Shown here piece by piece: positions 23,708 to 23,922 of a DNA stretch of 64,000 bases; position 1 is the first letter of the stretch, and the number at the start of each line of letters is the position of its first letter. The DNA is from Octopus sinensis. Lineage: Eukaryota. Both the position numbers and the translations under genes were made by a program. The stretch spans positions 96,348,001 through 96,412,000 of the forward strand of contig NC_042999.1 in assembly GCF_006345805.1 (NCBI RefSeq), written 5' to 3'. The notes under the pieces are model-generated. The model made no database searches, was not told where the DNA came from, and worked only from the letters and a program-made list of their open reading frames with translations.

Positions 23708-23922
23708 TCAAGACTGTTGAACACGGGCCCTGAAATCCCTCGGGTCTTTACAATAGTCAAGAAGTTCTTCAATGGTACAGGTATTGTAGCAACACTCACA
23801 AACGATCCCACTCCAGTTGCGGTCACGCTTCACCAAGTAGGACTTGGCTTTCTTTTTACTAATGATAATGTCTTTGAGTGTACTACTTCTATGGCGGAGA
23901 CCTCGGGATGCATAAGGTGATA
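23708..23922 (-). CDS. Terminal coding exon of a molluscan-type insulin-like peptide precursor (C-peptide end, KR cleavage site, A chain, short C-terminal extension)
   Basis: Translation (x)[70 protein letters not shown]. Canonical insulin A-chain spacing CC-x3-C-x8-C; extra Cys in GIVCECC as in molluscan insulin-related peptides; dibasic KR before the A chain; strong acceptor tcttttatcttcttcttttgcag giving a phase-1 intron in the C-peptide, the conserved insulin-family intron position; TGA at 23708-23710. Confidence 0.95.

What the first reader, a model, noticed from the sequence alone, without database searches (positions are those of the whole stretch)
23708..23922. Molluscan four-disulfide insulin-like peptide, the only host gene signal in 64 kb
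Seen: KR followed by A chain [25 protein letters not shown]. Established: CC-x3-C-x8-C defines insulin-superfamily A chains, and the extra Cys two residues before CC is the hallmark of molluscan insulin-related peptides, pairing with an extra N-terminal B-chain Cys. Which cephalopod paralogue this is, and whether it is neuroendocrine or salivary/venom-gland expressed, cannot be told from the sequence.
Basis: partly seen in the sequence, partly recalled or inferred. Interest (0 to 1): 0.75.

Follow-up and report, generated by a model that had tools for sequence, protein, structure and literature searches.

The report
Last exon of octopus insulin-like peptide gene
This stretch is the last coding exon of an already annotated and already measured octopus insulin-like hormone gene; the rest of the gene lies outside the window, beyond a very long intron, so the finding is real but ordinary.

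Summary
On the minus strand, 23922..23708 is an AG splice acceptor, 2 nt of a split codon, 70 codons and TGA. It encodes the distal C-peptide, a KR site and a 38-residue A chain with C-x-CC-x3-C-x8-C. It passes Pfam Insulin (28.7 bits, cut-off 23) and is the only such motif in all six frames.

It is 100% identical to the C-terminal 71 residues of Octopus sinensis XP_036357072.1 ("con-Ins Im1", 153 aa) and O. vulgaris CAI9719717.1. Both carry a hydrophobic N-terminus, an eight-cysteine B/A framework and RR/KR sites.

The signal/B-chain exon is not in the window. The O. sinensis gene spans 101.7 kb, and the Argonauta orthologue has a 92.5 kb phase-1 intron at this position.

Published O. vulgaris "Mirp" qPCR primers match the window perfectly and give the stated 190 bp amplicon. 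The transcript was therefore measured in the gastric ganglion in 2017. dN/dS against Argonauta is 0.13. The cuttlefish orthologue (SjILP) was cloned and knocked down by RNAi.

Verdict: a functional, already known molluscan-type insulin-like peptide gene. Low interest.

The parts
23708..23922 (-). Coding part of the terminal exon of the insulin-like peptide gene (2 nt of a split codon, 70 codons and TGA)
   Evidence: Pfam Insulin above cut-off. 100% identical to residues 83-153 of XP_036357072.1.
23825..23922 (-). Distal C-peptide (V)[32 protein letters not shown]. It ends in the KR processing site and contains the mollusc-wide conserved block [KR][KR]-x-A-x-S-Y-L-x-K-R.
   Evidence: Translation. 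In an 11-sequence mollusc alignment the columns A108, Y111, L112, K114 and R115 are invariant.
23711..23824 (-). A chain, 38 residues: [38 protein letters not shown], with five Cys in the pattern C-x-CC-x3-C-x8-C
   Evidence: The five Cys columns are invariant. The A chain has the same length (38 aa) as that of cuttlefish SjILP.
23708..23710 (-). Stop codon TGA
23923..23946 (-). 3' splice site: polypyrimidine tract plus AG (AG at 23924-23923), phase-1 intron
   Evidence: Sequence. The junction ...RRNY|VSPY... in XP_036357072.1 falls exactly here. Argonauta has a GT donor after ...AGTTACG and a phase-1 junction.
23629..23707 (-). 3' UTR, shown to be transcribed
   Evidence: The published O. vulgaris Mirp qPCR primers match perfectly at 23629-23648 (+) and 23799-23818 (-). 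The amplicon is 190 bp, as stated in PMC5736919.
23048..23628 (-). Probable continuation of the 3' UTR, or a conserved downstream region (inferred)
   Evidence: Blocks are about 85-100% identical to the Argonauta 3' flank, interrupted by TA/CA microsatellites. No canonical AATAAA was identified, and the poly(A) site is not determined.
23925..64000 (-). Part of the very long intron that separates this exon from the signal-peptide/B-chain exon, which lies beyond the window
   Evidence: No B-chain match anywhere in the window. The O. sinensis gene range is 101,724 bp. The Argonauta intron is about 92.5 kb.
36019..36356 (.). Single-copy conserved non-coding block in the intron, collinear with Argonauta
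   Evidence: 71% identity over 339 nt to L001 91325-91642, one hit only, with stops in all frames.
56273..56586 (.). Second single-copy conserved non-coding block in the intron, collinear with Argonauta
   Evidence: 70% identity over 319 nt to L001 57579-57888, one hit only, with stops in all frames.

Best explanation
This is the last coding exon of the octopus (O. vulgaris / O. sinensis complex) gene for a molluscan-type insulin-like peptide. NCBI annotates the gene as 'con-Ins Im1' (XP_036357072.1 and XP_029634273.1) and the O. vulgaris literature calls it 'Mirp'.

Shown here: the exon encodes the distal C-peptide, a KR cleavage site, the 38-residue A chain and the stop, followed by a transcribed 3' UTR. 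It is joined across a phase-1 intron of roughly 90-100 kb to an upstream exon outside the window, which encodes the signal peptide, the B chain (C-x14-CG-x10-C) and an RR site.

Inferred from established insulin-superfamily biology: the precursor enters the secretory pathway and folds with three canonical disulfides plus a fourth between the extra B-chain and A-chain cysteines. Prohormone convertases then cut at RR and KR. The two-chain peptide activates the insulin-like peptide receptor tyrosine kinase (PI3K/Akt and MAPK pathways).

From the literature: the physiological role is probably in feeding and metabolism through the gastric ganglion, and in ovarian development, as shown for the cuttlefish orthologue.
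For: - **Exact anatomy:**
- **Family match:** Pfam Insulin at 28.7 bits against a cut-off of 23. A profile of the mollusc alignment hits solved IGF-II, IGF-I and insulin chains at E = 4.5e-8 and weaker.
- **Identity to annotated proteins:** 100% to the C-terminal 71 residues of O. sinensis isoforms X1 and X2 and of the O. vulgaris model. 99% to the truncated O. bimaculoides model. 85% to Argonauta hians. The full-length O. sinensis protein is 62% identical to the Sepia latimanus ILP.
- **Framework:** all eight Cys are invariant across 11 mollusc sequences.
- **Gene structure:** the gene range is 101.7 kb in O. sinensis. In Argonauta, exon 2 is at L001 4820-5062 and exon 3 at 97587-97778, with a GT donor and a phase-1 junction.
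- **Selection:** dN/dS is 0.13 over 63 codons against Argonauta. Similarity is lost on the intron side of the acceptor.
- **Expression:** the published Ov-Mirp qPCR primers match perfectly and give a 190 bp amplicon. Expression in the gastric ganglion was 100-1000 CPM.
- **Orthologue function:** SjILP was cloned by RACE, is expressed mainly in the ovary, and RNAi lowers vitellogenin and related genes.
Against: - The signal/B-chain exon is not in the window, so the link rests on annotated models in three species and on the cuttlefish cDNA. No reads were aligned to this sequence.
- The qPCR amplicon lies within one exon, so it does not prove splicing.
- No poly(A) signal was identified.
- The AlphaFold model was uninformative (pLDDT 40.6).
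- Disulfide pairing, cleavage sites and receptor activation are inferred, not measured, in any octopus.
Confidence: 0.93

Rival explanations
1. Orphan exon or processed/decayed pseudogene: an insulin-like A-chain remnant that is no longer part of a working gene.
For: No signal-peptide or B-chain exon occurs within the 40 kb upstream in the window. The O. bimaculoides UniProt model is a truncated 90 aa protein without a B chain.
Against: The open frame is intact and has a good acceptor. dN/dS is 0.13 against Argonauta. The exon is identical to full-length models in two Octopus species. The orthologous intron is 92.5 kb in Argonauta, which explains the missing exon. The transcript was quantified at 100-1000 CPM and by qPCR.
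Confidence: 0.02
2. A weaponised (salivary or venom-gland) insulin, as the automatic RefSeq name 'con-Ins Im1' might suggest. It would be secreted in saliva to act on prey rather than as the animal's own hormone.
For: Only the database name, which is assigned by similarity to a cone-snail entry. Octopuses are venomous, and I found no tissue survey of the posterior salivary gland for this gene.
Against: The peptide has the endogenous molluscan eight-cysteine framework shared with non-venomous limpets, chitons and pond snails. It is under strong purifying selection. It is expressed in a visceral ganglion in octopus and mainly in the ovary in cuttlefish. A 2026 cephalopod venom-gland preprint mentions insulin only in a list of chordate peptide abbreviations.
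Confidence: 0.04
3. Chance occurrence of a cysteine pattern in a repeat-rich, AT-rich genome.
For: The window is full of TG/CA and TA microsatellites that translate into Cys-rich strings.
Against: The pattern is unique in six frames and lies in non-repetitive sequence. Pfam scores it above the cut-off. There are 92 homologues at E <= 0.001, and it is 100% identical to annotated proteins.
Confidence: 0.01

Closest known systems
Octopus sinensis 'con-Ins Im1' isoforms X1/X2 (XP_036357072.1, XP_029634273.1) and O. vulgaris CAI9719717.1
   Same: The C-terminal 71 residues are identical to the window's exon. This is the same gene, so the window comes from this species complex.
   Different: Nothing differs in the exon. 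The annotated isoforms differ only at the N-terminus, which is encoded outside the window. The name is an automatic similarity label, not evidence of venom use.
Ov-Mirp ('molluscan insulin-related peptide 3') transcript of the O. vulgaris gastric ganglion (PMC5736919)
   Same: Both qPCR primers match the window perfectly at 23629-23648 and 23799-23818, and the amplicon is 190 bp as published.
   Different: The paper named the transcript by its best Swiss-Prot hit (Lymnaea MIP III, P80090) and did not describe the gene structure.
Sepiella japonica ILP (SjILP, MK611805) and Sepia latimanus ILP (QHI00148.1)
   Same: These are the cuttlefish orthologues. They share the architecture of signal peptide, B chain, C-peptide and A chain, with eight Cys and a 38-residue A chain starting [13 protein letters not shown]. 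The full-length O. sinensis protein is 62% identical to the S. latimanus ILP.
   Different: The C-peptide and signal regions have diverged. Function (ovary expression, RNAi) was tested only in cuttlefish.
Lymnaea, Aplysia and other molluscan insulin-related peptides (MIPs)
   Same: They share the A chain C-x-CC-x3-C-x8-C, the extra B-chain Cys, dibasic processing, and the conserved C-peptide tail ...K[KR]xAxSYLxKR.
   Different: Outside cephalopods the best matches to the 71-residue exon are 45-58% identical over the matched stretch. Full-length gastropod and chiton sequences are 32-42% identical to the O. sinensis protein. The cephalopod A chain carries a 13-residue C-terminal extension ([13 protein letters not shown]), and the gene has a roughly 90-100 kb intron.
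Vertebrate insulin/IGF
   Same: The fold family is shared. The mollusc profile hits IGF-II, IGF-I and insulin PDB chains (E = 4.5e-8 and weaker), and there is a phase-1 intron in the C-peptide region.
   Different: Vertebrate peptides have three disulfides, not four, and overall identity is low.

Membership tests
Insulin/IGF/relaxin superfamily (Pfam PF00049) | A-chain cysteine motif CC-x3-C-x8-C | tested here: met
   [15 protein letters not shown] on the minus strand, unique in six frames.
Insulin/IGF/relaxin superfamily (Pfam PF00049) | Profile score above the curated threshold | tested here: met
   28.7 bits against a cut-off of 23, E = 2.8e-6, for the exon alone.
Insulin/IGF/relaxin superfamily (Pfam PF00049) | B chain with C-G-x10-C, encoded upstream in the same transcript | tested here: met
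   Not in the window. Present as YCGDKIPNFLRLIC in the full-length O. sinensis and O. vulgaris proteins, whose C-termini are identical to this exon. Located in Argonauta 92.5 kb upstream.
Insulin/IGF/relaxin superfamily (Pfam PF00049) | N-terminal signal peptide | tested here: inconclusive
   A hydrophobic stretch WTMLLALLISLLNWQLVIAG precedes LEHTC in P0093. No signal-peptide predictor was available, and the region lies outside the window.
Insulin/IGF/relaxin superfamily (Pfam PF00049) | Dibasic cleavage sites flanking a C-peptide | tested here: met
   RR follows the B chain. KR lies immediately before the A chain, inside the window. K114 and R115 are invariant in 11 molluscs. Cleavage itself was not measured.
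Insulin/IGF/relaxin superfamily (Pfam PF00049) | Phase-1 intron within the C-peptide coding region (that this is characteristic of the superfamily is from my own knowledge) | tested here: met
   The split Val codon is G|TA at 23922. Argonauta has the donor ...TACG|gtaag and the acceptor ...gcag|GACTC.
Insulin/IGF/relaxin superfamily (Pfam PF00049) | Insulin fold | tested here: inconclusive
   The AlphaFold2 model from a 4-sequence alignment had pLDDT 40.6 and was not usable for a fold search. A sequence profile does hit solved IGF and insulin chains.
Molluscan/lophotrochozoan four-disulfide insulin-related peptides (MIP type) | Extra A-chain Cys two residues before CC (CxCCxxxCxxxxxxxxC) | tested here: met
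   [18 protein letters not shown]. The motif is defined in PMC5996578 and PMC9221753.
Molluscan/lophotrochozoan four-disulfide insulin-related peptides (MIP type) | Extra N-terminal B-chain Cys, Cx(9-14)Cx11C | tested here: met
   C40-x14-C55-x11-C67 in P0093. These columns are invariant in the alignment.
Molluscan/lophotrochozoan four-disulfide insulin-related peptides (MIP type) | The fourth disulfide is actually formed in the mature two-chain peptide | not testable with these tools
   This needs peptide chemistry or mass spectrometry.
Molluscan/lophotrochozoan four-disulfide insulin-related peptides (MIP type) | Signals through an insulin-receptor-type tyrosine kinase | not testable with these tools
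   An ILP receptor has been described in cuttlefish (PMC9654127, listed). No ligand-receptor assay exists for the octopus peptide.
Cone-snail venom insulins (con-Ins), the label carried by the RefSeq entry | Venom-gland expression and action on prey | not tested
   No salivary-gland data were found. The known expression is in the gastric ganglion and, in cuttlefish, the ovary. The label is only an automatic similarity name, so I do not file the gene here.

The most novel reading that the evidence does not exclude
The exon's most conserved non-cysteine feature is the tail of the C-peptide. It is a short segment bracketed by basic sites: [11 protein letters not shown] in octopus, with the consensus [KR][KR]-x-A-x-S-Y-L-x-K-R in cephalopods, gastropods and a chiton. 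It could be released as a separate small bioactive peptide co-secreted with the insulin-like peptide, rather than serving only as a spacer or convertase-recognition element. From memory, C-peptide fragments ('C-alpha' peptides) have been detected in Lymnaea and Aplysia, so even this would extend something partly known.
Probability: 0.15. Interest if true: 0.4.

Novelty: already known. Interest (0 to 1): 0.15.

Why it matters
It matters little as a discovery. The gene is in RefSeq and UniProt, its transcript was quantified in O. vulgaris in 2017, and its cuttlefish orthologue has been cloned and knocked down.

The useful outcomes are practical:
- The anonymous window can be placed in the O. vulgaris/O. 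sinensis complex.
- The O. bimaculoides UniProt model (90 aa, no B chain) is shown to be truncated.
- The 'con-Ins' label on the RefSeq entries is a naming artefact, not evidence of a venom insulin.
- The gene has a roughly 90-100 kb intron with two conserved non-coding blocks and a conserved 3' flank. These could guide work on its regulation, given that insulin signalling in octopus feeding, reproduction and post-reproductive decline is still poorly understood.

Tried and rejected
- **B-chain exon in the window:** regex scans for CG-x10-C and C-x11-C in six frames, and tblastn with the Argonauta precursor at word size 2 and E up to 1000, found nothing beyond microsatellite translations. The roughly 92-100 kb intron explains this.
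- **O. sinensis locus DNA:** it could not be fetched because the gene's range is too long. The O. bimaculoides model and the window's own 89-aa ORF are not on record as called genes.
- **Alternative acceptor:** I considered an in-frame alternative acceptor 21 nt downstream (CCCGAG|GT), which is the site Argonauta uses. The annotated O. sinensis isoform X2 differs only at the N-terminus, so there is no support for alternative use in Octopus.
- **Structure prediction:** AlphaFold2 on a 4-sequence alignment gave pLDDT 40.6, so I ran no fold search.
- **Other features in the window:** Rfam and tRNA scans found nothing. The ten least repetitive ORFs of at least 110 aa have no Pfam hit.
- **Literature:** a search for 'con-Ins Im1' with octopus gave nothing relevant. 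The Aplysia insulin processing paper is not held in the library.
- **Poly(A) signal:** no canonical one was recognised in the conserved 3' flank.

Full report
**1. Observation**

The minus strand of 23708-23977 translates to ...[71 protein letters not shown]. Immediately upstream on that strand is ctcttttatcttcttcttttgcag, a polypyrimidine tract ending in AG at 23924-23923.

From 23922 the exon reads TA (completing a split codon), then 70 codons, then TGA at 23710-23708. That is 215 nt in total.

The CC-x3-C-x8-C pattern occurs only once in all six frames of the window. The 71-residue translation passes Pfam Insulin (PF00049) at 28.7 bits against a cut-off of 23, E = 2.8e-6.

**2. Identity**

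- A word-indexed search found only the O. bimaculoides UniProt model (P0001, 90 aa), at 99% identity.
- An exhaustive HMMER search found 92 homologues at E <= 0.001. The best full-length hit was a 150-aa Argonauta hians protein, 85% identical.
- Searching with that protein returned O. sinensis 'con-Ins Im1 isoform X1' (XP_036357072.1, 153 aa) and the Sepia latimanus insulin-like peptide.
- The last 71 residues of the O. sinensis protein are identical to the window's exon. The same is true of isoform X2 (147 aa, which differs only at the N-terminus) and of the O. vulgaris model CAI9719717.1.

The window therefore comes from the O. vulgaris/O. sinensis complex. I cannot tell which of the two species.

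**3. Where the rest of the gene is**

No B-chain or signal-peptide exon exists in the window. The O. sinensis gene range is 101,724 bp.

In the Argonauta locus L001:
- the exon for the signal peptide, B chain and proximal C-peptide lies at 4820-5062;
- the exon for the distal C-peptide and A chain lies at 97587-97778;
- the intron between them is about 92.5 kb, with the donor ...AGTTACG|gtaag, the acceptor ...tttttgcag|GACTCC, and phase 1.

In Octopus the junction ...RRNY|VSPY... falls exactly at the AG at 23923/4 and is also phase 1. Window 23925-64000 is therefore part of this intron, and the upstream exons lie beyond 64000. Argonauta uses an acceptor 21 nt further 3', so it lacks the seven residues VSPYASR. 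The cuttlefish protein has the long form.

The O. bimaculoides model replaces the true upstream exons with 19 residues from about 24014-24074. In this window that segment is followed by AT, not GT. I regard it as a mis-prediction.

**4. Is it functional?**

Against Argonauta, the shared 63 codons give dS 0.49, dN 0.065 and dN/dS 0.13. Similarity is lost on the intron side of the acceptor.

All eight cysteines are invariant in an alignment of 11 sequences, which include cephalopods, gastropods and a chiton. In O. sinensis numbering these are C40, C55 and C67 in the B chain, and C124, C126, C127, C131 and C140 in the A chain.

Direct evidence of transcription comes from the literature. The qPCR primers published for O. 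vulgaris 'Mirp' (molluscan insulin-related peptide 3) match the window perfectly at 23629-23648 (+) and 23799-23818 (-). They give a 190-bp product, the size stated in the paper. That study found the transcript at 100-1000 CPM in the gastric ganglion, with expression strongly changed by Aggregata infection. The amplicon lies within one exon, so it shows transcription and a 3' UTR of at least 79 nt, not splicing.

**5. How it works**

Shown: the architecture is signal-like N-terminus, B chain (C-x14-CG-x10-C), RR, C-peptide, KR, and A chain (C-x-CC-x3-C-x8-C) with a 13-residue tail. This matches the published definition of molluscan/lophotrochozoan insulin-like peptides with four predicted disulfides.

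Inferred from established insulin biology:
- co-translational secretion;
- folding with three canonical disulfides plus a fourth between the extra Cys of each chain;
- convertase cleavage at RR and KR;
- activation of the insulin-like peptide receptor tyrosine kinase.

The cuttlefish orthologue SjILP is 98% identical to the S. latimanus ILP, which in turn is 62% identical to the full-length O. sinensis protein. SjILP was cloned by RACE, is expressed in all tissues but mainly in the ovary, and its RNAi lowers vitellogenin and other ovarian genes. The octopus authors suggested a role in food intake or metabolism, or a neuromodulatory one. Work on the octopus optic gland implicated an insulin-binding protein but not this ligand.

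**6. Comparison and novelty**

This is a member of a known family and is itself already annotated and measured. The RefSeq name 'con-Ins Im1' is an automatic similarity label. I found no evidence of salivary or venom use. The framework, the purifying selection and the known expression sites all point to an endogenous hormone or neuropeptide.

The mollusc alignment profile matches solved IGF-II, IGF-I and insulin chains (E = 4.5e-8 and weaker). A structure prediction from a shallow alignment was uninformative (pLDDT 40.6).

**7. Other content of the window**

- There are no Rfam families and no tRNAs.
- ORFs of at least 110 aa are mostly microsatellite translations. The ten least repetitive have no Pfam match.
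- Comparison with Argonauta shows a conserved 3' flank of about 660 nt, two single-copy collinear conserved non-coding blocks in the intron, and a short multi-copy repeat.

**8. Verdict**

The finding is ordinary, with interest 0.15 and novelty 'already known'.

Noticed in passing
window 23048-23707 (minus strand, downstream of the stop): About 660 nt of 3' flank is conserved between Octopus and Argonauta, in blocks that are about 85-100% identical and separated by TA/CA microsatellites. One example is ...TGCCTGTAATTATCTGTCCGTTTAAGCAT... This suggests a long 3' UTR with conserved regulatory elements. No canonical AATAAA was recognised.
   Followed up: partly
window 36019-36356 and 56273-56586: Two single-copy blocks inside the giant intron are collinear with the Argonauta intron (about 70% identity over about 320-340 nt) and have stops in all frames. 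They are candidate conserved non-coding (regulatory) elements of the insulin-like peptide gene.
   Followed up: partly
window 11968-12080, 9097-9310, 54447-54566: A short (about 100-200 nt) interspersed repeat has three copies in the window and 17 matches in the 100 kb Argonauta locus. It is probably a SINE-like element shared by octopods.
   Followed up: partly
window about 24014-24074 (minus strand): The O. bimaculoides UniProt model of this gene (90 aa) begins with 19 residues encoded here instead of a signal peptide and B chain. In this window the would-be donor is AT, not GT. The public model is probably a mis-prediction caused by the roughly 100 kb intron.
   Followed up: partly
window 23825-23860 (C-peptide tail); alignment A2: The C-peptide tail [KR][KR]-x-A-x-S-Y-L-x-K-R is about as conserved across mollusc classes as the A chain. 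It is bracketed by basic sites, like a small neuropeptide.
   Followed up: partly
Argonauta locus L001 97560-97590 compared with window 23900-23924: The acceptor site has shifted by 21 nt between Argonauta and Octopus, changing the C-peptide by seven residues. Octopus still has an AG at the Argonauta position.
   Followed up: yes
remote hits (P0012, P0031, P0042, P0044, P0058, P0068, P0072): Proteins of 1200-3000 aa contain two to five insulin-like stretches each. They may be fused gene models of tandem insulin genes or real multi-domain proteins. Their source organisms were not looked up.
   Followed up: no
whole window: GC content is about 35%, and TA, CA/TG and poly-purine microsatellites are very dense (for example 2750-3700, 12600-13000, 18900-20800, 26400-27300, 32600-34100). 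These produce many long spurious 'ORFs' rich in Cys, Tyr, Ile, His and Thr.
   Followed up: partly
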